64,000 nucleotides of DNA, from positions 62,001 to 126,000 of the IMG/VR virus record IMGVR_UViG_3300042566_001780, one strand, 5' to 3'. Below the pieces are notes generated by a model. The model saw nothing but the letters and a program-made list of their open reading frames with translations, was not told the origin of the DNA and ran no database searches. The position numbers and the translations under genes are program-made. This document shows positions 24,645 through 61,376 of this stretch, in pieces (position 1 is the first letter of the stretch; the number at the start of each line of letters is the position of its first letter).

Positions 24645-25751
24645 ATGGCATCAAATCAAACAATTGCACTCAATTATGAAGGCGTTAAAGTTCTTACCCC
24701 AACTGGTTATCAGTATTTTACTGGTATAAGCAGATCCTGGCATGAAGAAATTATTGAGATAAAGACGGCAAATAGAAGTATTAAAGCCGGAGTAAAGCAT
24801 AAATTCTTAACTTTAGATGGTTGGGTCCAATCTAGAGATTTAAAAGTTGGCGATGCTTTAGTCAATAATCAATGTGAAGATGAATGCATTACTGAAATAA
24901 ACATCTTAGCTGAACCTCAGTGGATGTATGACTTATTAGATGTTGAGTCCGGTAATACATATGTAGCTAATGGGCTTATTTGTCATAATTGCGAGTTTCT
25001 CTCAAGCGATGCGCTGCTAATTAGCTCGGTAAAGCTGCATCAAATCAAATATGAAAAGCCTATTTTTGAATCAATGGGATTTAAATTTTGGGTACCAGAA
25101 GAAGCGCTTGGTGGTAAAGGCAAAATATATCTAGTAGGTTTAGATCCAGCTACTGGGGGCGGGAATGATTTTTCTGTTATCGAAATATTTGATTTTCCTG
25201 GGTTAAATCAAATTGGAGAATTTCGCTCTAATGAAATCAACATTCCATTATTGTATGCTAAACTGTCGTGGATTTTAAAGAAGCTTACAGCCAATGTCAA
25301 TGGTGGCATTGCTGAAGTATCATGGACATTTGAGCGTAATGGCATTGGCGAAGCGATTGGTGCGTTATACTTTAATGATGAGAAACAAGTTGAAGAAGCA
25401 GATTTGTTTAATGATCATCATACAAAGTTTGGGGTGTATACAACTGGAAAAACGAAGATTTTGAATTGTTTGCAGTTGAAGACACTGGTTGAAAAGATCC
25501 ATAATGGTTTGAACATCAAGAGCGAACTGCTTATACATGAACTGAAGAACTTTGTGGCAAAGGGTGGTGGGTATGAGGCCAAGTCGGGTTCTACGGATGA
25601 CGCGGTGATGGCGACGATCTTGATCATGCGGTTGCTAAAGCGGCTTTCAGAGTATAATGAAGAAGCTTTTTCAACAGTCCATGAGTACGTTGACCCGAAT
25701 GCCGACATACCTGCAGAAGATTCTGATTCACCTCTGCCAATAATTCTATGA
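24645..25751 (+). CDS. terL: intein 2 C-fragment (115 aa) plus terminase nuclease domain (253 aa)
   Basis: GGGAG RBS; MYDLL..NGLICHN/CEFLSS; GLDPATG, FERN, DDAVMA. Confidence 0.9.
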   Translation: MASNQTIALNYEGVKVLTPTGYQYFTGISRSWHEEIIEIKTANRSIKAGVKHKFLTLDGWVQSRDLKVGDALVNNQCEDECITEINILAEPQWMYDLLDVESGNTYVANGLICHNCEFLSSDALLISSVKLHQIKYEKPIFESMGFKFWVPEEALGGKGKIYLVGLDPATGGGNDFSVIEIFDFPGLNQIGEFRSNEINIPLLYAKLSWILKKLTANVNGGIAEVSWTFERNGIGEAIGALYFNDEKQVEEADLFNDHHTKFGVYTTGKTKILNCLQLKTLVEKIHNGLNIKSELLIHELKNFVAKGGGYEAKSGSTDDAVMATILIMRLLKRLSEYNEEAFSTVHEYVDPNADIPAEDSDSPLPIIL

Positions 25752-28643: not shown

Positions 28644-29780
28644 ATGTCAAATTTCCTCTTTGATTTCTTTGCTGAGTTCATCAAAGGTCCTATCTGGAAA
28701 CAGATGGAAGAAACCGTTGAAAACAGCCCGTGGCATCGTGAAGCAAACGTTGCTACTCATACTTTGATGGTGGTTTCGTATTTCAATGACCACTTTGCTC
28801 ACAAGTACACTGCAAAGCAACAAATGATTGCCATGTTGGCTCTCCTGTTTCATGATACTGGGAAGCCTGAAGCAGAAGAAGAGCTGGAAAAAGCTGATGG
28901 TTCTGGAAAATATCGCCGGTATGCTGGTCATGAGCTCGAGTCTGCTCACGTTTTCATGGAACAATATTTGGCCTCTTCATTGAAGGATCACTTGTCTGTC
29001 GAAGAAGCTCGTGCTATTCGTTGGATCATTGAGCATCATTTGCCCTATGGTTACAAAAACAAGCAGAAGCTTCAAGATCTGAAGAAGGCAACTATGTCGG
29101 CTCTTCATGCAGCAGATTGCCCAATGGGATTGTTCTATGATTGTCTGCGTGCTGATGCTCATGGCCGCATTAGCGATAACCATGAAGAGAAGCTGCAGAA
29201 CGTGGAAACTTGGATTTATTCTTTTCATGCTGTCACTTTTGAAGTTGGTGCAAAACGTCAGTATTCTGGAAAGATGTACATTTTGGTGGGCCCGTCGGGA
29301 TCAGGCAAGAGCACTTTTACTCAAGAGCTTTCGAAGAATCATGACGTTAGCGTCATCAATGATGATCAGATGAAGATGGATTTGTTCAGGAGCATCTTCG
29401 CTAATGACGCGCGATCTGATTTTGACATCTATGATGATGCATGGCAATATTGCACGATGGACCACAAACCAGAATATACGTTTTATCGCAACAAACAAAT
29501 CAGTGACATTGCATCAAATACTGCTAAAAACGGATCCGTTGTAGTTTGTGATATGGTCAATTCTTCTAAGAAACGCCGTGCGCAAATGGTAGATGTTGCC
29601 AAATGCCACGATCTGGATGTTGAGGTAGTTGAGTTTTGGGTTCCGCTTGATACCCTGCTTGCTCGACAGCAATCTCGGAGTGACAAGAGAGTCCCGGTTG
29701 ATTCCATCAAGAAACAATATAGCGCCATTCAACTTGCATGGTTGGGTGTCGAGTGCAACTCCGTAAAGGTGATTTCATGA
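28644..29780 (+). CDS. HD phosphohydrolase plus P-loop polynucleotide kinase (HD-Pnk-like)
   Basis: WHRE..HT, LFHDTGK, GHE, EHH; GPSGSGKS; RSDKRVP. Confidence 0.75.
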   Translation: MSNFLFDFFAEFIKGPIWKQMEETVENSPWHREANVATHTLMVVSYFNDHFAHKYTAKQQMIAMLALLFHDTGKPEAEEELEKADGSGKYRRYAGHELESAHVFMEQYLASSLKDHLSVEEARAIRWIIEHHLPYGYKNKQKLQDLKKATMSALHAADCPMGLFYDCLRADAHGRISDNHEEKLQNVETWIYSFHAVTFEVGAKRQYSGKMYILVGPSGSGKSTFTQELSKNHDVSVINDDQMKMDLFRSIFANDARSDFDIYDDAWQYCTMDHKPEYTFYRNKQISDIASNTAKNGSVVVCDMVNSSKKRRAQMVDVAKCHDLDVEVVEFWVPLDTLLARQQSRSDKRVPVDSIKKQYSAIQLAWLGVECNSVKVIS

Positions 29781-30051: not shown

Positions 30052-30243
30052 ATGATTGCTCAAACTTCTGGAATTCGCAAAGGCTATTTGGTGAAAGCCG
30101 AAGACATCAAGCATGAAGGTCGACTTTCTACTGAAGATATTCAGGACATTGACCACAAATTGGTGTTTGAATGGGTGAAGACTGGTCAGTGGAAACGCCA
30201 TGACTTTGAAAAGTGGCTGAAGGCAATTCGCGTCATTGAATAA
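30052..30243 (+). CDS. hypothetical protein
   Basis: VFEWVKTGQW motif; follows the early promoter at 30010. Confidence 0.55.
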   Translation: MIAQTSGIRKGYLVKAEDIKHEGRLSTEDIQDIDHKLVFEWVKTGQWKRHDFEKWLKAIRVIE

Positions 30244-30553
30244 GGAAACAAAAATGAGTGCTCTTCCTAAGTGGGATCCTATTTTTCTTCAAGAAGAATT
30301 TGGTGATGATGTTGTATCAAAGTTGGCATTTTTGTCTGGTTGCAATCGTCACTCTCTAGGTAATTCTAGCGTGAATGGTTGGATCATTGATGATGAGACT
30401 CTTCGCCAGTTTGCAGTTGCAATTGTGGATGAATGTCGAGAAGTTTTGAAGAAAGAAATGCAACGGCTTGATGAAATTCCTGGTCGTGAAATCAGCGCAC
30501 AGTCTTTTGAAACCGCGCATCTGTTGATCAAAAAACATTTCAATCAACCATGA
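30236..30553 (+). CDS. three-helix paralog family member
   Basis: QFAVAIVDEC..IKKHFN. Confidence 0.65.
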   Translation: MNKETKMSALPKWDPIFLQEEFGDDVVSKLAFLSGCNRHSLGNSSVNGWIIDDETLRQFAVAIVDECREVLKKEMQRLDEIPGREISAQSFETAHLLIKKHFNQP

Positions 30554-30756
30554 CTCTTGAACTGAATAAAATCAAGCGATCGATGCATGCAGATGTCATC
30601 GCATCTTTTTGGATGATGCTGCGTGAACTTGAAGAAAAAGCTGATTATGGCAGCCAACTTGACAAAGTTCAAGTTGAAGGTTGGTATAGGCAATGGAATC
30701 GAATGACTGGCGATGACAAAGTGCCACGTTGGAAACAGGTGAAAAATGATGAATGA
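30550..30756 (+). CDS. hypothetical protein
   Basis: Coupled ORF. Confidence 0.55.
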   Translation: MTLELNKIKRSMHADVIASFWMMLRELEEKADYGSQLDKVQVEGWYRQWNRMTGDDKVPRWKQVKNDE

Positions 30757-30988
30757 ACGAATCAAAGAGCTTGCTATGCAAGCAGACCCAGAATATACTG
30801 GTGATGAAGATGACAACATGGGTCATGCTTTGGTAGGAAATGCCGCTATTCAAAGATTTGCCGAGTTGATTGTGAAGGAATGTGCTATGCTTATTGGGGG
30901 TTTTGAAATTACCCAAGAAGTTGCCCTTGACGAATATGTTGATTATGAAGCAAGTGCGGTATTGAAAGAGCATTTCGGAGTTGAATGA
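30746..30988 (+). CDS. three-helix paralog family member
   Basis: MNERIKELA..RFAELIVKEC..LKEHFGVE. Confidence 0.75.
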   Translation: MMNERIKELAMQADPEYTGDEDDNMGHALVGNAAIQRFAELIVKECAMLIGGFEITQEVALDEYVDYEASAVLKEHFGVE

Positions 30989-31150
30989 TGAAAGTTAACA
31001 CCGCAGTACGTCGTATTGAAAATGCTATCAATTGCGGGGACTACAAAGAAGCAGATGCTATGCTAAAACGTTATTGCCGTAAATTTGGTAATCGTAAGTT
31101 CACTTATTGGCTTAGAACGTTTATTACAAATGGACTTTGGGAAATGAATT

Positions 31151-31402
31151 ATGAATGAACGAATCAAAGAACTTTTGCCCAACCCATTTGCTGTAGATTA
31201 TCAAGCTAGAGAAACGCCGCTTGATTTGTACACTGAAGTAGAAATGCAAAAATTTGCTTCTCGAATCATTGAAGAATGTGCAGCTATTATGCGAGCGCGT
31301 CTCTTCCCGGATTATGAGGGAAATTCACATAAAGTAGCACACAACAATGCACTGCTATGCGCAATCAGCGACTTGAATGAATTGATGGAGAATGAAGAAT
31401 GA
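31151..31402 (+). CDS. three-helix paralog family member
   Basis: MNERIKELL..KFASRIIEEC. Confidence 0.7.
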   Translation: MNERIKELLPNPFAVDYQARETPLDLYTEVEMQKFASRIIEECAAIMRARLFPDYEGNSHKVAHNNALLCAISDLNELMENEE

Positions 31403-31574
31403 ATACAGTTGTTTGGATTATGCTACTAGCCACTCATGGCTATAAGATGTCTGCAGGACCTGAATTTTCCACAAAAGAAAAGTGCGAGAAGGCTGCAGTC
31501 GTTATGGTTAATGCATTCGATGCAACACGACTCATCGGTAAATCTGAGATGCCACTTTGCGTGAAGATCGAAAA

Positions 31575-31808
31575 ATGAATGAACAACACATCAAGCAACT
31601 TGTCGGTCAAGCTAAATTCATGACTGAGGAAGCGCTCAACTGCAAATTATCATTCAATTCTGATCTGAAGACATTTAGTGAATTTTTTGCTGACTTGATT
31701 ATTCGCGAATGCGCAGATGTAGTTGCAGACATTAACCAAGACTATGATGGTGGGTCCACGACAGTCAATGCTGCAGAAGAAATCAAACAACATTTTGGAA
31801 TTGAATGA
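31575..31808 (+). CDS. three-helix paralog family member
   Basis: MNEQHIKQL..FADLIIREC..IKQHFGIE. Confidence 0.7.
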   Translation: MNEQHIKQLVGQAKFMTEEALNCKLSFNSDLKTFSEFFADLIIRECADVVADINQDYDGGSTTVNAAEEIKQHFGIE

Positions 31809-32029
31809 TGAATATCCGCATTCAGGAAATCAAAAATCGAGCTTCAGTGTGGTGTGATGAGAACATTCCTGAACAGTTTTCTGAAGAAACCAATGGTTAT
31901 GGAGCGGCTTGGGAAAACAAGTTTGCAGAGTTGATTATTAATGTGTGTGCTATATTGGGCGACTTTGCAGAAAATGGCGACGTTTTGAAACCTAGTGTGA
32001 TGATCAAAGATTATTTTGGAGTAGAATGA
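31805..32029 (+). CDS. three-helix paralog family member
   Basis: MNIRIQEI..KFAELIINVC..IKDYFGVE. Confidence 0.7.
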   Translation: MMNIRIQEIKNRASVWCDENIPEQFSEETNGYGAAWENKFAELIINVCAILGDFAENGDVLKPSVMIKDYFGVE

Positions 32030-32072
32030 TGCATGAACGAATTCAAGCGTTGATTAAGGATGCCACTAGAAT
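31997..32072 (+). repeat. 76-bp direct repeat, copy 1 (gene junction)
   Basis: 74/76 identical to 37146-37221 by manual alignment. Confidence 0.85.
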
Positions 32073-32277
32073 AATCCCTGCTGATTGGAATTGCGTAGAA
32101 GATCTTGAAGAATTTGACAAAGAAAAATTTGCTAAGTTAATTATACAGGAATGTCTGAAAATAACAGGTAGTCTTTCTATGCTACATTCTAGAAAAGATG
32201 TGGCATTTGATGTAGGCTACACAATGGGATGCGAGCGAGCAACTAAAGAAATCAAAAAACATTTTGGAGTAGAATGA
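32026..32277 (+). CDS. three-helix paralog family member
   Basis: MHERIQAL..KFAKLIIQEC..IKKHFGVE. Confidence 0.7.
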   Translation: MMHERIQALIKDATRIIPADWNCVEDLEEFDKEKFAKLIIQECLKITGSLSMLHSRKDVAFDVGYTMGCERATKEIKKHFGVE

Positions 32278-32278
32278 A

Positions 32279-32539
32279 ATGCAATACCTTTTGACACAGG
32301 AAGAGTATGATGCTCTGCATACCCACAAAGAGGAACACACTGCTCTTGAGAAAAAGAAACTACAAAAACTCTGCACCAAGATTGCAAATGAAATGCCAGT
32401 AGCATGGGGTTGGGGTGGCCCTGATCCTAAGCCATGGGGATGCTATTTGACAGCCAGAGACAATGATGAAGAATGGTATTGCGATAAGTGCCCTGTTCAG
32501 GAAATTTGTCCGTCTGATGAGAGAGCTTACTCACAATGA
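32279..32539 (+). CDS. Cys-rich hypothetical protein
   Basis: MQYLLTQEEY..WGC..YCDKCPV..CP. Confidence 0.6.
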   Translation: MQYLLTQEEYDALHTHKEEHTALEKKKLQKLCTKIANEMPVAWGWGGPDPKPWGCYLTARDNDEEWYCDKCPVQEICPSDERAYSQ

Positions 32540-32781
32540 ATGAAAAATTGAAAGATCTTGCATTCAGGGCAGGATTTGTTGGTGAAAGCATGTTTCCCAT
32601 TCTTGGCACATGTCAGGAAACTGCTTTGCAAAATTTTGCCAATTTGATTGTTGAAGAATGTTGCCAAGCTGCAAAGACGAAGCTATTGCCTAATTTGAGA
32701 GTTCATGAGACTCATCAAATGTCTTACAATGAAGGCATTCATTCTACTATCTTGGCCATCAATTCAAATTTCAAGAAGTGA
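32536..32781 (+). CDS. three-helix paralog family member
   Basis: MNEKLKDLA..NFANLIVEEC. Confidence 0.7.
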   Translation: MNEKLKDLAFRAGFVGESMFPILGTCQETALQNFANLIVEECCQAAKTKLLPNLRVHETHQMSYNEGIHSTILAINSNFKK

Positions 32782-33011
32782 ATATGCTAAGCCCAAAACT
32801 AAATGAGCTTCATTCTGCAGCATGGCTTGAAATTTCCAAGGGTCTCAATAATTGTGAACTGCAGTCTCATGAATTTGAAAGTGCAGTCAACGCTAAGTTT
32901 GCAAAGCTAATCATTGAAGAGTGCATCAAGTTTTTGCCTGAAGATTGTCAAGACCCGAAAACAAAAATTCATCTAAGCTATGTTCTTTTGAACCATTTTG
33001 AGGTAGAATAA
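32778..33011 (+). CDS. three-helix paralog family member
   Basis: KFAKLIIEEC..LNHFEVE. Confidence 0.7.
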   Translation: MNMLSPKLNELHSAAWLEISKGLNNCELQSHEFESAVNAKFAKLIIEECIKFLPEDCQDPKTKIHLSYVLLNHFEVE

Positions 33012-33249
33012 TGTCATTAGCAGAGAAATGGAAAAGTTTTGTTAAACGTCATCTTGATGCTATGATGGAAGCAGCTCAGGCAGATTCAGAAATTTCTTAT
33101 GCCGAATGGCAAGAGCTCAAAACTGAGTACAAGAAAACACTAGGTGAAGACTATGAACGAGGACAAAAAGTTCCAAAATCGCAGGTACGATGATTTCCAT
33201 AATCATGGTGGTTGGAAGAAGCGATTCAATCGATGGCTGAAAAAGTTCT

Positions 33250-33513
33250 TTGGTGAATGAAATGAAAAGCTACGAGGAAATGATTCAGTGGCACGTTGAT
33301 CAAGCAGACAACGGGAAGATTCGCCACTATGAATGGCCATCGTACTTTGCTATTTCGGAAGTTTTTGGAAAAGATGTCAACTCAGTTGTCGCTGACATTA
33401 ATGGTGAAAAGGCGCGGCGTGAAGAGATCAAAAAGCAGCAACGAAAAGAACAGCATCGTGTTGAAAATGAAAAACGCCGTCTAGCTAATTTACAGAAAGC
33501 TCAAAATGTCTAA
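33250..33513 (+). CDS. hypothetical protein
   Basis: ORF in early operon; start probably ATG near 33262. Confidence 0.5.
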   Translation: MVNEMKSYEEMIQWHVDQADNGKIRHYEWPSYFAISEVFGKDVNSVVADINGEKARREEIKKQQRKEQHRVENEKRRLANLQKAQNV

Positions 33514-33757
33514 AAGAATCTTGGAAATTGCTGAACGCGCTGGCATTCATTTTAGTAATAAGAGGATTCTTAATGGTGGCAATGAAATTGCTCAGTTTGT
33601 TACAAAATCTAGTGTGGAGTATTTTGCTGAGCTAGTTGCCCAAGAATGTGCTAGAGTTATTGAAGAGCACGCAAAACTGTTTCCTGAGGCAGATACAACT
33701 TGGCGTTGTGCTATGATAGAATCTGCCAAAGTCGTAAAAGATAATTTTCGGAGTTGA
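33506..33757 (+). CDS. three-helix paralog family member
   Basis: MSKRILEIA..YFAELVAQEC..VKDNF. Confidence 0.7.
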   Translation: MSKRILEIAERAGIHFSNKRILNGGNEIAQFVTKSSVEYFAELVAQECARVIEEHAKLFPEADTTWRCAMIESAKVVKDNFRS

Positions 33758-33760
33758 AGA

Positions 33761-33988
33761 ATGAATCCAGATGCTATCAAAAGATTTCGGTTCGCTGCTG
33801 CTGATCATGCAAATGAATTGAAACCTCTAGGTATTATGAAGTGGAATGAAGTTCGTGATGAAAAATTTGCTGAGTTGATCATTGAAGAAAATTCATCTAA
33901 AATGGTGGCAGCTTTGATGAGTGATCCTAATTTTGCAAAAGCTATGGATGCTTATTACGAAATCAAATGGGCACATCGTTTCGATTGA
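33761..33988 (+). CDS. three-helix paralog family member (divergent C-terminus)
   Basis: EKFAELIIEE. Confidence 0.6.
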   Translation: MNPDAIKRFRFAAADHANELKPLGIMKWNEVRDEKFAELIIEENSSKMVAALMSDPNFAKAMDAYYEIKWAHRFD

Positions 33989-33995
33989 ATAGATT

Positions 33996-34268
33996 ATGAA
34001 TAGCATCACAAAACGTCTAATGTCAGCGGCAGGTGCAGGATTTTATGACAAATGGCATCAAGGTAAGCACACAATAGAATTTACTACTGAAAAATTTGAT
34101 CCTGAAAAATTTGCCGAACTGATTGTACAAGAATGTATTTGCCTTGTGCTAAATGGGAAGCATGATAATGAAAAGTTTGACATTAATGACAAATTTCATT
34201 GTGGACACAACATTGCCCTGGAAAACGCTTCCGAAGGAATAGCAAAGCATTTCGGAGTTGAAAAATGA
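33996..34268 (+). CDS. three-helix paralog family member
   Basis: FDPEKFAELIVQEC..IAKHFGVE. Confidence 0.7.
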   Translation: MNSITKRLMSAAGAGFYDKWHQGKHTIEFTTEKFDPEKFAELIVQECICLVLNGKHDNEKFDINDKFHCGHNIALENASEGIAKHFGVEK

Positions 34269-34585
34269 TCTCAGCAAAAGAAGCTAAAGAACTCTATGAA
34301 AAGAGCAGCGCCCGCGTCAAAGTGTTTCTAGACAAAGAAGTTGAACCAAAAGTCAAAGAAGCTATTGATCTAGGCAAGAATTCCTGCACAATCTATCTTG
34401 GTGCAGAGCCGGTATTCAAGATTATTGCACCATCGGTTTTTCACCAACATGTGATGGAACAATTGCGCATTCTAGGCTACAAGGTTCAGTTTGGCCGTTA
34501 TGGTGAAACGTATGTGCCTCGAGGTCTGGGTGATGGGGTTTGCAGAGACGAGTACTGCAACTACGGCATTATGATTAGTTGGTGA
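34265..34585 (+). CDS. hypothetical protein
   Basis: MISAKEA..LGYKV..ISW architecture. Confidence 0.6.
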   Translation: MISAKEAKELYEKSSARVKVFLDKEVEPKVKEAIDLGKNSCTIYLGAEPVFKIIAPSVFHQHVMEQLRILGYKVQFGRYGETYVPRGLGDGVCRDEYCNYGIMISW

Positions 34586-34599
34586 TCTAAGGAAATGAA

Positions 34600-34872
34600 A
34601 TGACAATTGGATTCAGGAATCTTGTTCTTGGTGATGAAAGCACTACACCAGTGTCAGTCACAAAGTTGTTGAATGATGATCAGCAACTACAAAATTACGT
34701 GACAGCAATCAGGACAGAACTTGCTCGAGTAGAAGCCCAAAAGAAAATGCTGTCTGAGCTGCTTGAAGAGCAAATGGCAAAATGTCAGCACCTCGTTTTC
34801 AGGGACGTTGATGCTGGCATGTATGCATTTCGAAAATGCGTAATTTGCGGTTTTGACATGGGAAGCGTATGA
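34600..34872 (+). CDS. hypothetical protein with C-terminal CxH/CxxC
   Basis: ORF with AAGGA RBS. Confidence 0.55.
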   Translation: MTIGFRNLVLGDESTTPVSVTKLLNDDQQLQNYVTAIRTELARVEAQKKMLSELLEEQMAKCQHLVFRDVDAGMYAFRKCVICGFDMGSV

Positions 34873-35135
34873 TTGCTAAGATGGATGAGCTGGCCTTGAA
34901 AGCTGGTGCTTCATTCATTGGTGGGCACATTGAATTTCCGCCCGGATCAGGAGATTGGGTTTGGTACGAGTACAAGCACATCGACTATAATGACATGTGC
35001 CACCGCGAATTCATGAAGCTAATTGTTGAAGAATGCTTCAAGGCTGCTATGATTGAATCAAAAGGTCACATAAACCCGGTTGATCTAATGAATAGAATGA
35101 AAGAAATGACGGGGCTCAGTCAAAATGACATCTAA
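34869..35135 (+). CDS. three-helix paralog family member
   Basis: MDELALKAG..EFMKLIVEEC. Confidence 0.6.
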   Translation: MIAKMDELALKAGASFIGGHIEFPPGSGDWVWYEYKHIDYNDMCHREFMKLIVEECFKAAMIESKGHINPVDLMNRMKEMTGLSQNDI

Positions 35136-35928
35136 CAAAGACATTATCAATCAACTCCAAGACTGCATTCGTGATCTACTTGAGTTTGTAGAATCGCACA
35201 GTCATCATTGGAATGGCGTAGTTGCGCAGCATCCGCAAATTTTGGCAGAAGTTGCACATCCGCTATTGGAATTGAATGCAGCTGACATGAAGATGCCGGT
35301 GAAGACTCCAACACCTCCAGCAATGGCGGAAATGAGCGATATCATTTTTGCTGAAGGATGGAATGCATGCGTTGAGGCATTCTTCGATGGTGTTGAATCA
35401 GATCCGCCAACAATTATCACCGTAACTGAGACACTTGGAAAAGAGCCAGTTGGGTGGCAAGTTTGGTCTGGCGTGATGGATATGCGCCCACATTGGCCGC
35501 CCTTTCAAACTAAACCAGAAGCTGAAGCTCTTGCTGAGCGTATCAAAAGTAATACAGAAGTTCGTCCTGTGTATGCTGGTGAAATGAAACAATCACCAAA
35601 GCAGTACTTCTATAAGAATAACGAATGCACTGCACAATCCGCAAAAGATCCTGGCTGCAAATGTTGGTGGGACATTGGCACAGGTCCATTAAAAGATGGG
35701 ACTCCTACTGATTTTCGTGAAAAGCCAAAGGTGTCACAATGTGAACTTCCTCCCGCTGGTTGGATTTGCACTAGACAAGCAGGACATGATGGCCCCTGTG
35801 CAGCCCATAATGCTGAATCTATCATTGAGCTTCAAACTCAACTAGAAAATTTGAAAAAGGTCGTTGATGTCAAAATGAATGAGATTAGAAATGTCATTAT
35901 GTCTACCTTGACTAAGGATTTGAAATGA
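35125..35928 (+). CDS. mosaic hypothetical protein (Ead/Eaa-like modules)
   Basis: GWNAC, EPVGW..RPVY, PPAGWICTR..HDGPCAA modules. Confidence 0.5.
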   Translation: MTSNKDIINQLQDCIRDLLEFVESHSHHWNGVVAQHPQILAEVAHPLLELNAADMKMPVKTPTPPAMAEMSDIIFAEGWNACVEAFFDGVESDPPTIITVTETLGKEPVGWQVWSGVMDMRPHWPPFQTKPEAEALAERIKSNTEVRPVYAGEMKQSPKQYFYKNNECTAQSAKDPGCKCWWDIGTGPLKDGTPTDFREKPKVSQCELPPAGWICTRQAGHDGPCAAHNAESIIELQTQLENLKKVVDVKMNEIRNVIMSTLTKDLK

Positions 35929-36275
35929 TGAAGTGCTTTAGCATCGATGATGAGAACTTCAACTATGATTCTCTCGGTGATTTAATAATGTCAACTAGTC
36001 CTGAAGTGGGCGATTTCTACTATGAAGCAGATTGTGTTGATGTGATTGTTGACAATTATCTGGTGAATCATTTGCTTGAAGATGCCGATGATTTGCTATA
36101 TGACGATCTCGGTGAAATCTATGATAGTGATTTTTCAAAGGTGTCTGATGAAGCCAAGAAAGAATTGCTAATTTTGCTGCAAACCTGGGCAGCAAAGCAC
36201 GTCAACTTGGATCGCTATTGGAAAATTGTTGGGGAAAGCAGGAAGCTGCAATTCACCAAAGAAGATCTTGAATGA
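35925..36275 (+). CDS. acidic hypothetical protein
   Basis: Coupled ORF. Confidence 0.55.
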   Translation: MMKCFSIDDENFNYDSLGDLIMSTSPEVGDFYYEADCVDVIVDNYLVNHLLEDADDLLYDDLGEIYDSDFSKVSDEAKKELLILLQTWAAKHVNLDRYWKIVGESRKLQFTKEDLE

Positions 36276-36285
36276 AGGATTGAAA

Positions 36286-36948
36286 ATGTTTGAAGAAGAA
36301 TGGGACGCGGCTGATTGGGTCAAATTGCTTAAGCTAGCTGCAAATGGAAAAACCACTTTGTCAAAAGACCAGCTCAAAGAAGTAGCTGCGTTTCTTTTTC
36401 AACAAGCTACAGAAATTGTGAAATTGAAAAGTAAGTTGGAAGAGGAGGGTGAGATTGTTATCACTACTAGTTTTGAAACTGGCAAGTGTCTTGCTGTCAC
36501 ACGCCAAGATGAAGAAGGTCGAATCCTAAGAATTGTTTGGGAAGCACCTGATGTTGTTGAACAGGATGAGCCGAGCGTAGAAGAAGCTCTTCGTGTTTTG
36601 CATAGTGTAGAGACCTCAGTGCAAAGTGGAATCAATGTCACCGATGGTTGGAGAATTTTGCGAAATCTCATTAGCAAGTTCAAAATTGTCCCTCACGGTG
36701 TGCAAAAAGCTATTGAGAATGCGGGATTCACTTTGGTGAAAAACCAGTTTGGTTATCATCTCATGAAACTTGGCAAAATTGAGGCACATTCTGTTCAAGA
36801 TGAAGAATCTCAACCAGTAGCTTGGAGACTTCGTGATGAAGAGCCTGGAATGAAACCTCGATGGGTCTACTATGATGAGGACGATTTTGTAAAAGGCGTC
36901 ATTCCACATGAGGTTTTTCCAAAGCTTCAAAAGCTCTACACAAAATGA
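36286..36948 (+). CDS. mosaic hypothetical protein
   Basis: AVTRQDEEGRILRIVW and QPVAW modules; start uncertain. Confidence 0.5.
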   Translation: MFEEEWDAADWVKLLKLAANGKTTLSKDQLKEVAAFLFQQATEIVKLKSKLEEEGEIVITTSFETGKCLAVTRQDEEGRILRIVWEAPDVVEQDEPSVEEALRVLHSVETSVQSGINVTDGWRILRNLISKFKIVPHGVQKAIENAGFTLVKNQFGYHLMKLGKIEAHSVQDEESQPVAWRLRDEEPGMKPRWVYYDEDDFVKGVIPHEVFPKLQKLYTK

Positions 36949-37178
36949 AACTAACTGCACAACAGAAGTTTGACCTACTTCCAAAAATTCAACTCAAGGG
37001 CGAAAAAAAGCCTACTACTCAAGTTTGGTTGACCCAAAAAGATGCACTCAACTATGCAGATCAAATTGAATCTGCTGCTAGTGAACATTTTCAAAAACGT
37101 ATCGATCAATTGGAAGAAATCATTGAAGAGCAACGCAGAGCTCTAGTGATGATCAAAGATTATTTTGGAGTAGAATGA
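36945..37178 (+). CDS. hypothetical protein ending in the family C-terminus MIKDYFGVE
   Basis: Unrelated body with repeat-derived end. Confidence 0.55.
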   Translation: MKLTAQQKFDLLPKIQLKGEKKPTTQVWLTQKDALNYADQIESAASEHFQKRIDQLEEIIEEQRRALVMIKDYFGVE

Positions 37179-37221
37179 TGCATGAACGAATTCAAGCATT
37201 GATTGAGGATGCCACTAGAAT
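37146..37221 (+). repeat. 76-bp direct repeat, copy 2
   Basis: 74/76 identical to 31997-32072. Confidence 0.85.
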
Positions 37222-37375
37222 GAACCGAATTTTGAAAAATGGTCTTATTACGGCCTACATCATTTTTATGTCACTTGCTTTTCTTGGAAAAACTGGTGAC
37301 TATTTTGTAGCTGGTGTTGCTGCACTATCAATGTTTGCAGTTTGGTCATTTGCTGTCAAAATTAAAACAAAATGA
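37175..37375 (+). CDS. two-TM protein with repeat-derived N-terminus
   Basis: MMHERIQALIEDATR followed by a hydrophobic body. Confidence 0.5.
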   Translation: MMHERIQALIEDATRMNRILKNGLITAYIIFMSLAFLGKTGDYFVAGVAALSMFAVWSFAVKIKTK

Positions 37376-37698
37376 AAACAAAAGATTTTCCATCAGTTGT
37401 AGCTGCAAGAAAAGTTGTAGAAAAACAGGCTGCGCGCTATCATCAAATGATGGGCACTAATCATCAAATGAATGAAGCAACCAAGCAGCTCATCATCAAA
37501 TCCGGTCTTTCCCCAACTGAACAATGTTATGATGCGCATGGTTACTGTTTTGAAGCAACTAACCAAAAGCTGAAAGCACTGGTCGAGAATGTAGTTCGAC
37601 AAGCTATTTGGATTGCTTATCATAGTCATGCAATGAATAAGGATGCCAAATTCACCGAGCATCTGGATGAAGTGAAACGTTACTATGGGATTGAATGA
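37372..37698 (+). CDS. three-helix paralog family member (divergent)
   Basis: MNEATKQL..VKRYYGIE. Confidence 0.55.
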   Translation: MKTKDFPSVVAARKVVEKQAARYHQMMGTNHQMNEATKQLIIKSGLSPTEQCYDAHGYCFEATNQKLKALVENVVRQAIWIAYHSHAMNKDAKFTEHLDEVKRYYGIE

Positions 37699-37842
37699 TG
37701 AAGGGTCCTCGAGAATTGAAGAACTATGTAGCTCGATTTCGCAAAGAGCTCAAGGCAATGCATTGGGATGACCTGCTTATCTTCAAACTGCAACGCTGTA
37801 AGAAATGGTTCAAACGGGACAAACGAATCAAGAAAGAAGACT

Positions 37843-38067
37843 ATGAATGAAATAGTGAAGCAACTTTTGGATGAATCAACCCAAACTATTGAAATTATTG
37901 ATCCTGACACCAAGCTTACGCATCACCGGTCTTTCATTGATCAAGAAGAATTTGTGAAGTTGCTTGTTGAAGAAATCCAGCACCGATGCATGCAAGAATG
38001 GTTTGGCGATTCTCTTGAAGATATTATCTATGATAGATTGCCGAAGCACTTTGGACTAACATCCTAA
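37843..38067 (+). CDS. three-helix paralog family member
   Basis: MNEIVKQLL..EFVKLLVEE..PKHFGL. Confidence 0.6.
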   Translation: MNEIVKQLLDESTQTIEIIDPDTKLTHHRSFIDQEEFVKLLVEEIQHRCMQEWFGDSLEDIIYDRLPKHFGLTS

Positions 38068-38088
38068 TATTTGTAGAATTCACCAGAT

Positions 38089-38118
38089 GAGGCCCAGAGA
38101 TGAAAATTTCTGGGCCTC
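38089..38118 (+). terminator. hairpin/terminator ending the early operon
   Basis: GAGGCCCAGAGA..TTTCTGGGCCTC. Confidence 0.6.
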
Positions 38119-38263
38119 AATTAGTTTCACATCCATCAAAACAAAGCGCCCTCAGAGCCCTCGGCAATCCTAAAACTTTGTTACAAATAGGATGTAAAAA
38201 AGTTACAATAGACTCTTATCGAAATTTGTTGATGAAATTGGAAGAAATCATCACCAGATTTTG

Positions 38264-38320: not shown

Positions 38321-39244
38321 ATGACAACCAAACGTTCCCTTGCTGATCTTGCTGCTGCTTTTTCTTCCAAAGCTAATGAAGGCGGATCCAGCCCCACTTG
38401 GAAGCTTTTCTTCAATTTCTGGAAAGCTCCTGTCGATAGCGTATCCACTGTTCGTTTCTTGCCTGATGCTAATCAAGATAACCCTATGGGTTTCCTTGTT
38501 GAAAATCTAGTGCATGAGCTGACGATCAATGGCAAACGCGAAAAAGTGCCTTGCTTGAAGATGTACGGTGAATCTTGTCCAGTTTGTGAGCTTTCTGCTC
38601 AATACTACGATGAGAAGAATCCGCTGCATTCTGAAGAACTTGGTAAGAAGTTCTATCGTAAAAAGTCTTACATTGGCCAAGTGCTTGTGATTGACACTCC
38701 CGTTGAACATGATGGTGACCAACTTGTCAAGCTAATTGAATTCGGTCCTCAGGTCTTTAAGCAAATCCAAGCTGCATTCCAGTCTGGTGATCTTGAAGAA
38801 GCCCCCTATGAGCTTAAGGGTGGTTACAATTTCCGTTTCCGTAAGACTTTGACTGGCGCAGGTCAGAATTCTTACACCACTTCTAACTTTGCTCCTAAGC
38901 AAACTGACGTAGCAGACGATACGCTGAATGCAATTACACTGTATGATCTTTCTCAGTATCGCACTCCGAAAATGGATCGCACTGCTTTGGAAGCTATGCT
39001 CGTAGCTGCTCAGACCGGTGAAAGCTATACTGCAGAATCCGATGCTCCTGCTAAGACTGCAGACACAGTGAACAAGCTTCGCGATCGTCTTGCACAATCG
39101 GCCGATGCTGATGATGCTCCTGCGGCAGAAACTCCTAAGGCATCTGCTCCTGAAGAGTCGTCTGGTGGCAACAAGCAATCTGTGGTGGAAATGCTTCGCG
39201 CACGTGCTGCAGCTGCTAAGGCTGCACAGCAAGCTGCTCAGTAA
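38321..39244 (+). CDS. single-stranded DNA-binding protein, T4 gp32-like
   Basis: VRFLPD, H..C..CPVC zinc site, GYNFRFRK, Y..SNF. Confidence 0.9.
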   Translation: MTTKRSLADLAAAFSSKANEGGSSPTWKLFFNFWKAPVDSVSTVRFLPDANQDNPMGFLVENLVHELTINGKREKVPCLKMYGESCPVCELSAQYYDEKNPLHSEELGKKFYRKKSYIGQVLVIDTPVEHDGDQLVKLIEFGPQVFKQIQAAFQSGDLEEAPYELKGGYNFRFRKTLTGAGQNSYTTSNFAPKQTDVADDTLNAITLYDLSQYRTPKMDRTALEAMLVAAQTGESYTAESDAPAKTADTVNKLRDRLAQSADADDAPAAETPKASAPEESSGGNKQSVVEMLRARAAAAKAAQQAAQ

Positions 39245-39317: not shown

Positions 39318-39593
39318 ATGGGTTTACCATTTTTAGACAAGTTTAAAAAAGAAGTTGCTAAGCTTGAAACGGTTGGCGTCGGCATTAAAGAAACAGAAGT
39401 TTGGTTGAGTACTGGCAATTATGCATTGAATCGCGCATTGTCTGGTGATTTCAAAAAAGGCGTTCCGCTCAGTAAGATCACCCTGTTCGCGGGTCCCAGT
39501 GGGTGTTTGCCGGCTGATGAGAAGGTTGGAATTTATGTTTTTAAATCGCAGCCCTCAATAACAACGCCAATCTTTTTTGAAGAAAAAAAGTAA
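39318..39593 (+). CDS. uvsX: UvsX/RecA part 1 (62 aa) plus split intein N-fragment (29 aa, from 39504)
   Basis: STGNYALNRALSG..FAGPSG then CLPADEKV. Confidence 0.9.
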   Translation: MGLPFLDKFKKEVAKLETVGVGIKETEVWLSTGNYALNRALSGDFKKGVPLSKITLFAGPSGCLPADEKVGIYVFKSQPSITTPIFFEEKK

Positions 39594-39601
39594 AAAGTGT
39601 G

Positions 39602-39634
39602 ACGCTCCTATAAATAGCTTATTTATAGGAGCGT
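39602..39634 (+). promoter_or_regulatory. late promoter TATAAATA in a perfect 15-bp hairpin that covers the endonuclease RBS
   Basis: ACGCTCCTATAAATA-GCT-TATTTATAGGAGCGT; ATG at 39638. Confidence 0.8.
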
Positions 39635-39637
39635 ATT

Positions 39638-40879
39638 ATGACAGCAAAACTTTACGATTTATTTCTTCATGCTAACACTGGCAAAAAACCAGTTAAACCG
39701 AGACCATTAGTATCTTTTGAAACATTTAAAGACATAATTCTCTCAAATATCAGTAATATATTTGAAGATGATGCGTTTTTAAAAAATAAATATGATCAAT
39801 ACTGTGCTTTATATAACAGTACAGTGTTAACAAAAATTAGTGGTGTAGCAGCTATTTTAGGATTTGAATCAAAAAATACATGCTTAAATTATTGGCTTTC
39901 ACGTGGATGGCCCGCAGATATTGCATTAGAAAAACATCGAAATAGGCAAGCTACAGTTAAATTGGCAAATATAGCCAAATCGCACAATGTTTCAATGTCT
40001 GAAGCTAAAAGAATAAAAACTGAGAGACTTAATCGTGGAATAGAAACATTAAAAAATAAAAGCAATTACGATGAAATTTGCTATTCGCGTGGAAATAGTA
40101 TGCGAGTTTCATATTATGAAACTAAAATAAATCCCAAAACTGGAAATTTATATACGTCTAAAGAGGCAGCTGATTTAATTGCGCAAAAATCAGCAAAAAG
40201 AGCAACTAAATTTTGGGATGATGTACGCGCTGGGAGAAAAATTTATGATGCTTCGACATCGCTAAATTATTATCTGAAAAAGGGTATGACAGAAGATGAA
40301 GCGCGGGCAGCTTTAACCAAGAGGCAAACAACTTTTTCTAAGCAAATATGCATAGAAAAACATGGACATGATAAGGGATTAGAAATATTTAATAAAAGAC
40401 AGGAAAAATGGTTGGCTACTTTAAATTCTTTTTCTGATGAAGAGAAACAAAGAATTTTAATAGCAAAAACCAGTAAATCAAAATCATATTCTCAAGAAGC
40501 TACTAAATTTTTAATTAAACTTTTGGATAAACTTGGCATTTCTAGAAACTCAGAATATGTTAAAATGTGTGATAACGAAATGTTTTTATGGTCGCGAGAT
40601 AAAAAGATAGGTTTTTATGATTTAGCAATTGTAAATTTAAAAATAATTGTTGAATACCATGGATCATCATTTCATCCAAATCCAAATTTATCTGAGGATC
40701 AATTAAAATGCTGGATAAACCCAATTACTAAGGTGAGTGCATATGATCAAAGAAAAAGAGATTTTCAAAAACTGATAACTGCAAAAGAGCATGGATATAC
40801 AGTGTTTGAAGTTTGGGACGCAGACGATCATGATTCAAAAATTATTGAAATTTGTAACTTTATAAAGGAAAAACTATGA
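39638..40879 (+). mobile_element. free-standing Vsr-like homing endonuclease inside fractured uvsX
   Basis: KRQTTFSKQICIEKHG..RQEKW; YDL..IVEYHGSSFH..GYTVFEVW; locally very AT-rich. Confidence 0.8.
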
Positions 40880-42312
40880 GTACTTTTACCGCTGAAGTGA
40901 TGTTAGCAGAGTTGTTAGCTAATTTTTCATCGCAAGATTTGATCAAGAAAATTGGTATTTCTAAACCAACACTTAAAAAGCTTTATGATGGTGAAGCTAG
41001 CAATGAAGTGTTGTTTAAACTAGAACAGGCTTTTTTGGCACATGTAAGAGCAAACATTAAACAGATTTCGATGTCAAATTTAAAGTCGATTTTGGAATCT
41101 GGTAATACTGTAATGGTGGATACGCCTGATGGGCCTCAGGCGATTATTAAATTTTTTAATAAAGATGCTAGGTCTATTGTTAAACTCAGCACAGCAAATG
41201 GAAAAACACTAACATGTTCAAATGACCATTTAGTTGAAACTGATTTTGGGTGGGCGTATGCAAATAAAGATGTAGTTGGCAAAAATGTACTAACTGGTGA
41301 AGGCTTTAATCCTGTAATTAAAGTTGAAGACCTAGCACCTGAACCCGTTTTCGACTTTGAAGTAGCACATCCAAACCATCGTTATTGGGGCGGTGATGGT
41401 ATTTCTTCTCACAATTCTGGAAAATCCTTCATAGCTTCCAATCTTGCATTGCAGGCTCAAAAAGATGGATACCATGTTCTGTATCTTGACTCCGAGCATG
41501 CTATTGATGTTGATTATCTGAAGAAGATTGGTGTTGACGTTAGTGAAGATAGTCTTACATATCTCTCAGTCACTACCATTGAAGATGTCAACTCGGTGCT
41601 TTCCGAATTCTTTAGTGGGTATGTTAAGGCGTATGGTAAGGATTCTACGACTGCACCCAAAACCCTGATTGTTCTTGATAGTCTTGCTATGTTGAGTTCT
41701 GCTACTGAGATGGAGAACTATGACAAAGGCGGCATCATTAAAGCGGACCAAGGTATTCTCGCAAAACGTCGTAAAGCAATGCTTCGACTAGCTACTGGTC
41801 ATTTGGGTCGGTTGCCAGTCAACATGGTGATTACCGACCACGTGTACCCCGCTGATATTATGGCAGGTGACGGTGCATGGGCAATTACAAACTCCACTAA
41901 ATTCTCATCTTCAATTATTGGTATTGTCACAAAGCTCAAGCTAAAAGAAGAAGGTGAAATTACTGGTGTTCGCATGCGTTTTGAAACGTATAAGAGCCGA
42001 TTTGCAAAGCTTGGCACTAAGGTTGAGCTTGAAGTTCCTTATAACAAGGGAATGAGCCCTTTTAGTGGATTGCTTCCGCTTCTTGAAAGCATGGGAGTTA
42101 TTGCTAAAGGTACTAAGCCTGGTGAAAAGCTTCTTTGGGTATGCGAATGGACAGATGAAGATGGCGAAATTCATGAAGTCAAGTTCAAGGAAAAAGATTT
42201 GACTGATGACATTGTTCAGGAACTTCTTAAGCATCCTCTTTGCGCTGCAACAATGGCTCGCCCAGCTACTAAAGAAGATGAACCTTCTCTTGAAGATGAC
42301 GATGTAGAGTAA
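40876..42312 (+). CDS. uvsX: HTH-like segment plus split intein C-fragment (180 aa total), then UvsX part 2 (298 aa)
   Basis: TCSNDH, VFDFEV..SSHN/SGKS; YLDSE, IVLDSL. Confidence 0.9.
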   Translation: MSTFTAEVMLAELLANFSSQDLIKKIGISKPTLKKLYDGEASNEVLFKLEQAFLAHVRANIKQISMSNLKSILESGNTVMVDTPDGPQAIIKFFNKDARSIVKLSTANGKTLTCSNDHLVETDFGWAYANKDVVGKNVLTGEGFNPVIKVEDLAPEPVFDFEVAHPNHRYWGGDGISSHNSGKSFIASNLALQAQKDGYHVLYLDSEHAIDVDYLKKIGVDVSEDSLTYLSVTTIEDVNSVLSEFFSGYVKAYGKDSTTAPKTLIVLDSLAMLSSATEMENYDKGGIIKADQGILAKRRKAMLRLATGHLGRLPVNMVITDHVYPADIMAGDGAWAITNSTKFSSSIIGIVTKLKLKEEGEITGVRMRFETYKSRFAKLGTKVELEVPYNKGMSPFSGLLPLLESMGVIAKGTKPGEKLLWVCEWTDEDGEIHEVKFKEKDLTDDIVQELLKHPLCAATMARPATKEDEPSLEDDDVE

Positions 42313-49058: not shown

Positions 49059-49382
49059 GTTTTGCTTGGATGAAGATCAACTCGAGAGAGAAGATCGTTT
49101 GAAGAGAAAACGAAGGCTCAGCCATAAGCAGTGCGCGCAATTTATAGGCATTATGGGGCAAATAAGCTTTAGTGCTGAGCAGTGACAAATAAGAAAGGTG
49201 ATTTTTCATAAGCTATAGCTTAGACATAGCACCATCAATTGAAAAGAAGCACTATTCACCCTAATTACACCAGAGGATCCCAGGGACACCAAAATAAGAA
49301 TAACATATGGTACCTTATCCGAGTAAAGAAACACCTCTGGTGACACCTAATGCATTTTGTTAGCCACTCAACCTGCGTTTGT

Positions 49383-60893: not shown

Positions 60894-61175
60894 ATGGAAC
60901 CAATCAAAGCTGGCGATCTTTGTGAAGTCATTTCTGGACTAGGTCGACACAAGAGCCCTAATCTTGGTCTTTTTGTGAAAGCCATTTCAACTGTTGGTGA
61001 TCATTCACTATATGGAAGAGTGTGGCGTTGTGAAGGACCACATGTGCAGCAATTGACAGACACTGGTACTTATCAGGTGACTGGTTGGGCAGATTTCCCA
61101 GTCACTTGGCTGCGCAAAATCAAGCCTGATGAAAATGTTGGTGTGAAAGACGAAAAACTTGAGAATTCAGTGTAG
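60894..61175 (+). CDS. hypothetical protein
   Basis: KAGDLC..WLRKI motif. Confidence 0.55.
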   Translation: MEPIKAGDLCEVISGLGRHKSPNLGLFVKAISTVGDHSLYGRVWRCEGPHVQQLTDTGTYQVTGWADFPVTWLRKIKPDENVGVKDEKLENSV

Positions 61176-61184
61176 AATAGATAC

Positions 61185-61376
61185 ATGAACAAAATCATGT
61201 CTTTCATTGAAGAATGGTGGATGATTCCTCCTATTATTTTCGTCATTCTTCAACTCTTCATCACTGTCCCTCAAGCTGTGTTGATGATCGCGGGATTGAT
61301 TGGATTTGCGATTGCACTCGCAATCATTGTAGCTATGATGATTACCATCAAATGGCTACTTAGCAAATGCTTTTAG
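61185..61376 (+). CDS. small two-TM protein
   Basis: Hydrophobic; TAGAAT 6 nt before the ATG. Confidence 0.5.
   Translation: MNKIMSFIEEWWMIPPIIFVILQLFITVPQAVLMIAGLIGFAIALAIIVAMMITIKWLLSKCF

What the first reader, a model, noticed from the sequence alone, without database searches (positions are those of the whole stretch)
31997..37221. 76-bp near-identical junction repeat creates chimeric genes, suggesting cassette shuffling
31997-32072 and 37146-37221 match at 74/76. Copy 1 joins two family members. Copy 2 grafts MIKDYFGVE onto an unrelated ORF and MMHERIQALIEDATR onto a membrane ORF that keeps its own ATG. This points to recent recombination using junctions as crossover points. Recombination between the copies would excise or duplicate about 5.1 kb (a gene accordion).
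Basis: partly seen in the sequence, partly recalled or inferred. Interest (0 to 1): 0.6.

Follow-up and report, generated by a model that had tools for sequence, protein, structure and literature searches.

The report
Gene-junction patch in phage paralog array
In an uncultivated jumbo phage, a 76-base piece spanning the boundary of two small sister genes has been copied over the boundary of two unrelated genes 5 kb away, making hybrid genes; it is a clean but fairly ordinary example of short-repeat recombination remodelling a variable region of a phage genome.

Summary
The repeat is real. Window 31997-32072 and 37146-37221 match at 74/76, with a perfect 52-nt run, and this is the most identical repeat in the 291.7-kb phage genome. 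Copy 1 is the native boundary of two members (A, B) of a roughly 80-aa paralog family that is arrayed between an HD/AAA_33 gene and gene 32. Copy 2 is derived. Six contigs from relatives at 86-89% identity carry the same neighbours, but with a 92-aa X that has its own tail and a 51-aa Y that starts at its own ATG. Here, 65 nt of that native junction were replaced, base for base and in register, by donor sequence. The patch is bounded by the microhomologies GTGAT and TAGAAT, and both reading frames are kept. A strain at 97.35% identity already carries the identical patch, so the patch arose after the split from the 86-89% relatives and before the split from that strain. The best reading is a one-step templated patch, meaning ectopic gene conversion or a double template switch. 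A 5.1-kb duplication followed by deletion is the main rival. Comparison of three lineages also shows four rearrangements whose crossovers lie in the family's conserved N-terminal, central or C-terminal blocks. So cassette shuffling is supported, although in the flagged event the junction was the cargo and not the crossover point.

The parts
31997..32072 (+). Copy 1, the donor: the native boundary between paralogs A and B. It holds the end of A, the SD GGAG, the overlapping stop/start (ATGATG) and the first 15-16 codons of B.
   Evidence: The A homolog in relative L048 ends with the same 10 residues, so the left half is native to A.
37146..37221 (+). Copy 2, the derived patch: 65 nt of donor sequence between the microhomologies GTGAT (37146-37150) and TAGAAT (37216-37221). 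It replaces exactly 65 nt of the native X/Y junction.
   Evidence: Ungapped alignment with L048, L050, L051 and L053 (native) and L044 (patched).
31805..32029 (+). Gene A, a 74-aa family member.
   Evidence: HMM E = 1e-20; 73-aa homolog in L048.
32026..32277 (+). Gene B, an 83-aa family member. It is flanked by exact 17-nt repeats (32013-32029 and 32261-32277), is absent from L048, and its C-terminal half is fused to another paralog in the L054 lineage.
36945..37178 (+). Gene X, 77 aa, a chimera: 68 native residues followed by 9 residues from the end of A. The native form in relatives is 92 aa.
37175..37375 (+). Gene Y, a small two-helix membrane-type ORF. Its native ATG is at 37220 (51 aa in relatives). 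Here it is preceded in frame by 15 B-derived codons with SD GGAG (37167-37170) and ATG at 37175/37178.
30236..38067 (+). Array of 13 paralogs of about 80 aa, interspersed with unrelated small ORFs, all on the + strand and mostly with overlapping stop/start codons. The conserved blocks are an N-terminal helix, a central motif and a C-terminal HFGVE-type end.
   Evidence: The family has at least 559 metagenomic homologs.
30745..31174 (+). A 28-nt N-terminal junction repeat (30745-30772 and 31147-31174, 93% identical) bounding a two-gene segment that L048 and L054 lack.
31557..31808 (+). Hybrid paralog: its N-terminal half matches L048 gene 5917-6162 and its C-terminal half matches L048 gene 6159-6380. 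The crossover lies in the central motif (31667-31711).
33281..34548 (+). A 1267-bp, five-gene segment that is deleted in L048. There is no junction repeat at its edges, so this was an illegitimate event that left gene stumps.
28644..29780 (+). Conserved upstream anchor gene (HD plus AAA_33 kinase-like).
38321..39244 (+). Conserved downstream anchor, the gene 32 ssDNA-binding protein.

Best explanation
The window comes from an uncultivated jumbo myovirus with a T4-type replication module. Between a conserved HD/AAA_33 gene and gene 32 lies an 8.5-kb hypervariable slot. It is filled with a tandem array of roughly 80-aa paralogs that share three conserved blocks. The C-terminal block also encodes the Shine-Dalgarno sequence and the overlapping stop/start for the next gene. 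Copy 1 is the original A/B boundary. Copy 2 arose when a 76-nt stretch of that boundary was copied over the boundary of two unrelated downstream genes, X and Y. The most likely route is a single event during recombination-dependent replication. A nascent or invading strand switched template at GTGAT, copied 65 nt of the A/B junction, and switched back at TAGAAT (short-patch ectopic gene conversion or double template switch). The two microhomologies are 65 nt apart in both donor and recipient, and both junctions have the same -1 stop/start overlap. The swap was therefore length-preserving and left both ORFs open. X lost its native 24-residue tail and gained 9 residues from A. Y gained a strong SD and an optional 15-residue N-terminal extension. 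Shown: the direction (copy 1 to copy 2), the exact edges, the length preservation and the relative age. Inferred: one step rather than two, and which start codon Y now uses. The same array evolves more generally by unequal recombination at the conserved family blocks.
For: The native state is seen in six contigs from relatives (L048-L053): X is 92 aa with a different tail, followed by a 51-aa Y. The alignment of native and patched junctions has no gaps; there are 65 nt between GTGAT and TAGAAT in the donor, the patch and the native sequence. In-register identity between the donor and the native junction is 37/76, the best of 301 offsets (z about 4.6), and TTGGAG is also in register. The donor remains intact and is typical of the family; the end of A is the same in L048. 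The patch is 97% identical to copy 1, whereas paralogs are only 21-41% identical at the protein level. L044, at 97.35% identity, carries the identical patch, including both differences from copy 1. General remodelling at the family blocks is shown. The slot is variable: the anchor gap is 8541 bp here against 231-6527 bp (median 887) in 29 IMG/VR relatives, none of which has a family member in the gap.
Against: No intermediate is available, and no strain is known with A-B adjacency plus a native X/Y junction. One-step and two-step routes give the same product. The equal 65-nt spacing could be coincidence. Genome-wide, 51 positions match the native 76-mer as well as the donor does in register, so homeology alone does not single out this donor. 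The direction rests on two clades without a formal outgroup, although the typical family character of the donor and the lack of any donor for the 'native' tail make the reverse direction very unlikely.
Confidence: 0.7

Rival explanations
1. Two-step 'accordion'. First, a microhomology (GTGAT) crossover between X and the end of A in two genome copies produced a 5.1-kb tandem duplication with an X::A joint followed by a second B. Second, a deletion at TAGAAT between that B and the start of Y removed the duplicate, leaving only the 76-nt scar.
For: It uses the same two microhomologies and gives exactly the observed product. Deletions are the commonest event in this array. A headful-packaging phage can tolerate an extra 5 kb (established knowledge of T4-type phages).
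Against: It needs two independent rare events. The exact 65/65-nt length match and the in-register similarity would then be coincidences. No duplication joint was found in the contig collections, but this is weak evidence.
Confidence: 0.2
2. The patched form is ancestral, and the relatives replaced it with a new X tail and a shorter Y.
For: Only two clades are available, so parsimony alone cannot polarise the change.
Against: The patch is 97% identical to a paralogous junction 5 kb away, while the surrounding family members are highly diverged. The native tail varies among L048, L050 and L053 about as much as its flanks do, as expected for long residence. The family HMM sees nothing of the family in the bodies of X or Y.
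Confidence: 0.03
3. Assembly artefact: a chimeric join or collapsed repeat in the metagenomic contig.
For: Short-k graphs do break at this repeat (L042 and L046), and a k=31 graph cannot pair the in-edges and out-edges.
Against: L044, from another run, spans X-patch-Y. L048 and L054 place A and the C-terminal half of B just upstream of the 86-aa gene, as in the window. All four ORFs are intact, and the same contig is reported from two samples.
Confidence: 0.02
4. The repeat is a mobile regulatory cassette of the PeSL type, or a conserved functional RNA or regulatory element kept similar by selection.
For: It lies in a hyperplastic region of a phage with T4-type replication genes, and it carries an SD and a start codon. 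PeSL-flanked indels are the known mode of shuffling in such regions (PMC2839356, PMC4122927).
Against: It is wholly coding, with overlapping genes and no intergenic space. Promoter-like and terminator-like sites are not enriched (26 vs 19.1 +/- 4.9 and 10 vs 7.2 +/- 2.8). The repeat does not fold better than shuffled sequence (z = -1.3 and -0.2). The junction motif occurs only four times in the genome, all in this array.
Confidence: 0.03

Closest known systems
PeSL-mediated modular shuffling in hyperplastic regions of T4-type phages (Arbiol et al. 2010, PMC2839356; Comeau et al. 2014, PMC4122927)
   Same: Small ORFan cassettes sit between conserved core genes. Indels between close relatives are bounded by short repeated sequences at gene boundaries. 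The recombination is attributed to the phage's own machinery, which acts on homologies of about 50 bp or less.
   Different: Here the repeats are coding: they are the conserved termini and the central motif of a paralogous protein family, together with an embedded SD and stop/start overlap. They are not intergenic promoter plus stem-loop cassettes. No promoter or hairpin was detected. The flagged event is a templated replacement, not an excision or insertion. Mini-circles were not tested.
Ectopic (non-allelic) gene conversion / microhomology-mediated template switching (FoSTeS/MMBIR; e.g. PMC2621351)
   Same: The donor is retained unchanged, a short tract is replaced in the recipient, and both edges carry 5-6-nt microhomologies.
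   Different: Donor and recipient are not paralogs. They share only in-register homeology of about 49% and the same stop/start architecture. The event happened in a phage genome, and the enzymology is inferred, not shown.
Unequal crossing-over in tandem paralog arrays
   Same: Hybrid genes and gene-number changes have crossovers in conserved blocks. Examples are window 31557-31808, P0012 in the L054 lineage, and the loss of B in L048.
   Different: The homologies are very short (17-45 nt), within proteins of about 80 aa whose remaining sequence is highly diverged.
Poxvirus-type gene accordions
   Same: A direct repeat pair could in principle drive expansion and contraction of the 5.1-kb segment between the copies.
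   Different: No copy-number variation of the segment has been observed, and the two-step route is only a rival explanation.

Membership tests
PeSL (promoter-early stem-loop) cassette | Lies in the intergenic space between an upstream stop codon and the downstream ATG | tested here: not met
   Both copies lie inside overlapping ORFs, with a stop/start overlap and no intergenic space.
PeSL (promoter-early stem-loop) cassette | Contains a sigma-70-type early promoter | tested here: not met
   Promoter-like sites number 26 against 19.1 +/- 4.9 in shuffles. Only one weak 9/12 site overlaps copy 1, and none overlaps copy 2.
PeSL (promoter-early stem-loop) cassette | Contains a conserved G+C-rich stem-loop terminator | tested here: not met
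   There is no terminator-like site in either copy. Folding z-scores are -1.3 and -0.2.
PeSL (promoter-early stem-loop) cassette | Indels between close relatives are bounded by the repeats | tested here: met
   This holds for the analogous coding repeats: the 28-nt and 17-nt junction repeats bound two indels.
PeSL (promoter-early stem-loop) cassette | Excised mini-circles are detectable | not testable with these tools
This needs inverse PCR or read mapping.
Hyperplastic region of a T4-type genome | Variable block of small ORFs between conserved core genes, differing among relatives | tested here: met
   The anchor gap is 8541 bp here against 231-6527 bp in 29 relatives. There are six structural differences from L048, which is 88-93% identical.
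Unnamed phage paralog family (no Pfam or PHROG) | Full-length match to the family profile, covering the N-terminal helix, the central motif and the C-terminal block | tested here: met
   This is met for A, B and 11 other ORFs in the array. X and Y match only over the grafted ends. No Pfam or PHROG family was found.
Ectopic gene conversion / templated patch | Donor intact, recipient tract replaced, and the ancestral recipient state known | tested here: met
Ectopic gene conversion / templated patch | Arises in one event without a duplicated intermediate | not testable with these tools
   The only support is the length-preserving, in-register geometry, which is indirect.
Gene accordion | Copy-number variation (tandem duplication or deletion) of the segment between the repeats within populations | tested here: inconclusive
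   The predicted deletion and duplication joints are absent from the viral and metagenome contig collections. Assemblies drop rare variants, and reads were not available.

The most novel reading that the evidence does not exclude
The three conserved blocks of this small-protein family (N-terminal helix, central motif, C-terminal end with SD and stop/start) may be selected as built-in recombination linkers. Under this reading the array is a combinatorial diversification system. N- and C-modules would be reassorted between paralogs, and, as at X/Y, a portable 'junction cassette' could be pasted onto unrelated genes. That would recruit those genes into the translationally coupled, shuffling-competent array, as a coding-sequence analogue of PeSLs or integron cassettes.
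Probability: 0.12. Interest if true: 0.65.

Novelty: new variant of a known kind. Interest (0 to 1): 0.38.

Why it matters
This is an unusually well-resolved natural example of how phage 'dark-matter' genes are remodelled. Donor, recipient, ancestral state, exact breakpoints and relative age are all recoverable from public data. It shows that short homologies inside coding sequence can play the role ascribed to intergenic PeSLs in T4-type phages. These homologies are the conserved protein termini, which double as translational-coupling signals, and a central motif. It also shows that a junction can be transplanted in register onto unrelated genes without breaking either ORF. This offers a concrete route to new chimeric small proteins and to new N-terminal extensions of membrane proteins in jumbo phages. 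It does not reveal a new kind of machinery.

Tried and rejected
- Megablast of the array against isolate phages found nothing. Protein B also has no tblastn match in isolates. The closest isolate by gp32 is Ralstonia phage RsoM2USA at 45%.
- Pfam and PHROG scans gave nothing usable for A, B, X, Y or their neighbours.
- The AlphaFold model of B is confident (pLDDT 87; helix, hairpin, two helices). It has no PDB match and matches only uncharacterised phage proteins. The family's function therefore remains unknown.
- PeSL features (promoter, hairpin) and RNA structure were rejected.
- The exact 35-nt junction core was not found in other viral or metagenome records. The predicted deletion joint (A flank to Y flank) and the duplication/circle joint (X flank to B flank) were not found either. 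These negatives carry little weight.
- The exact-protein look-up of the 86-aa neighbour gave no further strains.
- No homing-endonuclease-like gene was found within the array that could have supplied a targeted break.
- The Logan contig L042 (5157 nt, bounded by the two copies) is not evidence for a circle. Its ends are exactly the k-1 overlaps expected at a 52-nt repeat.
Full report
**Observation.** Window 31997-32072 and 37146-37221 are direct repeats at 74/76, or 81 nt at 95% if extended, and lie 5149 nt apart. The first 52 nt (31997-32048) are identical. The two differences are 32049 G / 37198 A, which is silent in the B frame, and 32056 A / 37205 G, which changes Lys to Glu. The window is positions 62001-126000 of a 291,687-bp IMG/VR viral record. 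In a self-BLAST of that whole genome, the pair is the most identical repeat present (E = 5e-29), and every other repeat is at or below 91.5%. Similarity ends abruptly on both sides.

**Context.** All ORFs from about 28.2 to 42.3 kb lie on the + strand.
- A conserved HD/AAA_33 kinase-like gene (28644-29780) and gene 32 (38321-39244) flank an 8.5-kb block of small ORFs.
- Thirteen of these ORFs belong to one paralog family of about 80 aa. The family has a conserved N-terminal helix, a central motif and a C-terminal HFGVE-type end.
- The codons of that C-terminal end contain the Shine-Dalgarno GGAG for the next gene, and its stop codon overlaps the next start.
- The full junction motif occurs only four times in the genome, all within this array.
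- The family has no Pfam or PHROG model, but it has at least 559 metagenomic homologs, all from phages where known.
- A model of B is confident (pLDDT 87; helix, beta-hairpin, two long helices) and has no counterpart in the PDB.
- The phage is a jumbo myovirus with T4-type replication genes. Its nearest isolate by gp32 is Ralstonia phage RsoM2USA at 45%.
- In 29 IMG/VR relatives that hold both anchor genes, the gap between them is 231-6527 bp (median 887). None of these gaps contains a family member. The array therefore occupies a hypervariable slot.

**What copy 2 is.** A word search with X found three proteins that are 87-89% identical but 92 aa long. They match X up to the residue encoded at 37146-37148 and then continue with a different 24-residue tail. 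Their contigs (L048-L053, from several independent runs and assemblies) are syntenic with the window at 86-93% nucleotide identity. In L048, L050, L051 and L052 a 51-aa Y is called directly after X; it begins at the ATG that corresponds to window 37220. In L049 and L053 no ORF is called in the corresponding interval. These relatives show the state before the patch.

The native and patched junctions align without any gap. The left edge is the microhomology GTGAT and the right edge is TAGAAT. Exactly 65 nt lie between these edges in the donor, in the patch and in the native sequence. Donor and native junction are 37/76 identical in register, which is the best of 301 offsets (z about 4.6). A shared TTGGAG is also in register. 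However, 51 other genomic positions match the native sequence equally well.

The A homolog in L048 ends with the same ten residues as A here. The left half of the repeat is therefore native to A, and copy 1 is the donor.

Both junctions have the same -1 stop/start overlap, so the swap kept both frames.
- X now stops at 37176-37178.
- The B-derived ATGs at 37175 and 37178, with GGAG at 37167-37170, are in frame with Y's own ATG at 37220.
- A weaker GAGGA lies 10 nt upstream of the native ATG.
- Which start is used is not known.

**Age and reality.**
- L044, a Logan contig from another run, is 97.35% identical over 1321 nt. It reads through X-patch-Y and carries both diagnostic differences from copy 1.
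- The patch therefore predates that strain split but postdates the split from the 86-89% relatives.
- L042 (window 32019-37175, 100% identical) and L046 (which ends at 32026) come from a third run. They break exactly at the k-1 overlaps of the 52-nt perfect run.
- That pattern is what a k=31 graph must produce. It is not evidence for a circle.

**Mechanism.** The donor is retained, a short tract is replaced, the edges are microhomologies, and the geometry is length-preserving and in register. This fits a single templated patch best: ectopic gene conversion or a double template switch during recombination-dependent replication. The enzymology is inferred from what is established for T4-type phages. 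The alternative uses the same two microhomologies in two steps. A 5.1-kb tandem duplication would create the X::A joint, and a later deletion would join the second B to Y. The two-step route is not excluded, but it makes the equal spacing a coincidence.

**The wider claim of cassette shuffling.** Comparison of the window with L048 and with a third lineage (L054-L063, found through protein P0012) gives the following events.
1. A 63-aa ORF (30055-30252) is present only in the window, with AAATGA at both edges.
2. A two-gene segment (30772-31147) is absent from both relatives. Its crossover lies in a 28-nt N-terminal junction repeat that is 93% identical.
3. Window gene 31557-31808 combines the N-terminal half of one L048 paralog with the C-terminal half of the next. 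The crossover is in the central motif.
4. B is absent from L048, and in the window it is flanked by exact 17-nt C-terminal junction repeats.
5. In the L054 lineage, P0012 combines the N-terminal half of the L048 6159-6380 paralog with the C-terminal half of B. The crossover is again in the central motif.
6. A 1267-bp, five-gene deletion in L048 has no repeat at its edges.

The simplest history is an ancestor with five genes in the order 81-aa, 73-aa, A, B, 86-aa. Each lineage then lost a different piece by unequal recombination at a conserved family block. This also makes the A-B adjacency ancestral, as the donor role of copy 1 requires.

**Comparison with known systems.** The closest described system is PeSL-mediated modular shuffling in hyperplastic regions of T4-type phages (PMC2839356, PMC4122927). 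In that system, intergenic promoter plus stem-loop cassettes of about 100 bp bound ORFan indels and give rise to mini-circles. The present repeats behave in a similar way, but they fail the defining features.
- They are coding, with no intergenic space.
- Promoter-like and terminator-like sites are not enriched.
- The repeat has no significant fold.

I therefore file this as a new variant of a known kind, not as a PeSL. The flagged event itself is best described as ectopic gene conversion or template switching.

**What could not be done.** The predicted deletion and duplication joints were searched for in the assembled collections and were not found. This says little, because assemblies drop rare variants. 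The 52-nt perfect run is about the size reported to suffice for T4 recombination (cited in PMC2839356). Occasional loss or duplication of the 5.1 kb between the copies is therefore a reasonable but untested prediction.

**Verdict.** The finding is a well-documented junction transplant in a paralog array of a jumbo phage. It is of moderate interest as a clear natural example of how chimeric phage ORFs arise, and it does not point to a new kind of system.

Noticed in passing
window 39318-42312: The UvsX/RecA-like gene looks 'fractured'. A 91-aa ORF ends just after the P-loop start and continues with an intein-like Cys-Leu-Pro start. A free-standing 413-aa ORF follows (39638-40879). Then comes a 478-aa ORF whose first ~178 residues are not RecA-like and end in His-Asn followed by Ser-Gly-Lys-Ser; the RecA match starts at residue 179. 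Relative L050 has the two halves (88 and 472 aa) without the middle ORF. From memory, this resembles split-intein 'fractured genes' with an intervening homing-endonuclease gene.
   Followed up: partly
L054:3158-4375 (- strand); L048:11314-11409; own genome G000 193105-194313 and 259340-260440: In one relative, an IS605-type TnpB gene sits directly after the homolog of window 33761-33988. It is followed by sequence homologous to window 60904-61255, which means either a rearrangement or a mis-join. A 97-nt piece of that element lies upstream of gene 32 in L048. The window's own genome has two TnpB homologs outside the window.
   Followed up: partly
window 37372-37698: The 108-aa ORF after Y ends with a family-type C-terminal block and an ATGATG overlap. 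From residue ~35 on it gives a weak full-length match to the family profile (E = 0.69). It may be a very diverged member with a 32-34-residue N-terminal extension, that is, an older fusion.
   Followed up: partly
window 49102-49195: A 94-nt repeat that is 91.5% identical, in inverted orientation, to genome 176687-176777, with a third copy at genome 280251-280368 (84%). This is the next most identical repeat family in the genome, and its nature is unknown.
   Followed up: no
window 38088-38119: A strong terminator-like hairpin (14 pairs) lies just upstream of gene 32, at the downstream end of the array.
   Followed up: no
window 24645-25751 and from about 44920 onward: Precomputed Pfam hints of Hint/intein domains: a 368-aa ORF (PT-HINT, weak) and the ribonucleotide reductase large subunit (Intein_splicing, weak). 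Together with UvsX, this suggests a genome rich in inteins.
   Followed up: no
window 30260-34000 vs L048 and L054: Identity to relatives is mosaic along the array. L054 runs at 95.7%, then 90.5%, then 93.2%. L048 runs at 92.7, 89.5, 88.5, 88.0, 92.6 and 89.4%, then 97.9% in gene 32. This is consistent with frequent homologous exchange among co-occurring strains.
   Followed up: no
genome G000 150.0-153.5 kb and 167.4-168.6 kb (outside the window): Large families of 72-80% identical internal repeats, with periods of about 130-260 nt, dominate the self-BLAST. They are probably repetitive protein-coding genes.
   Followed up: no
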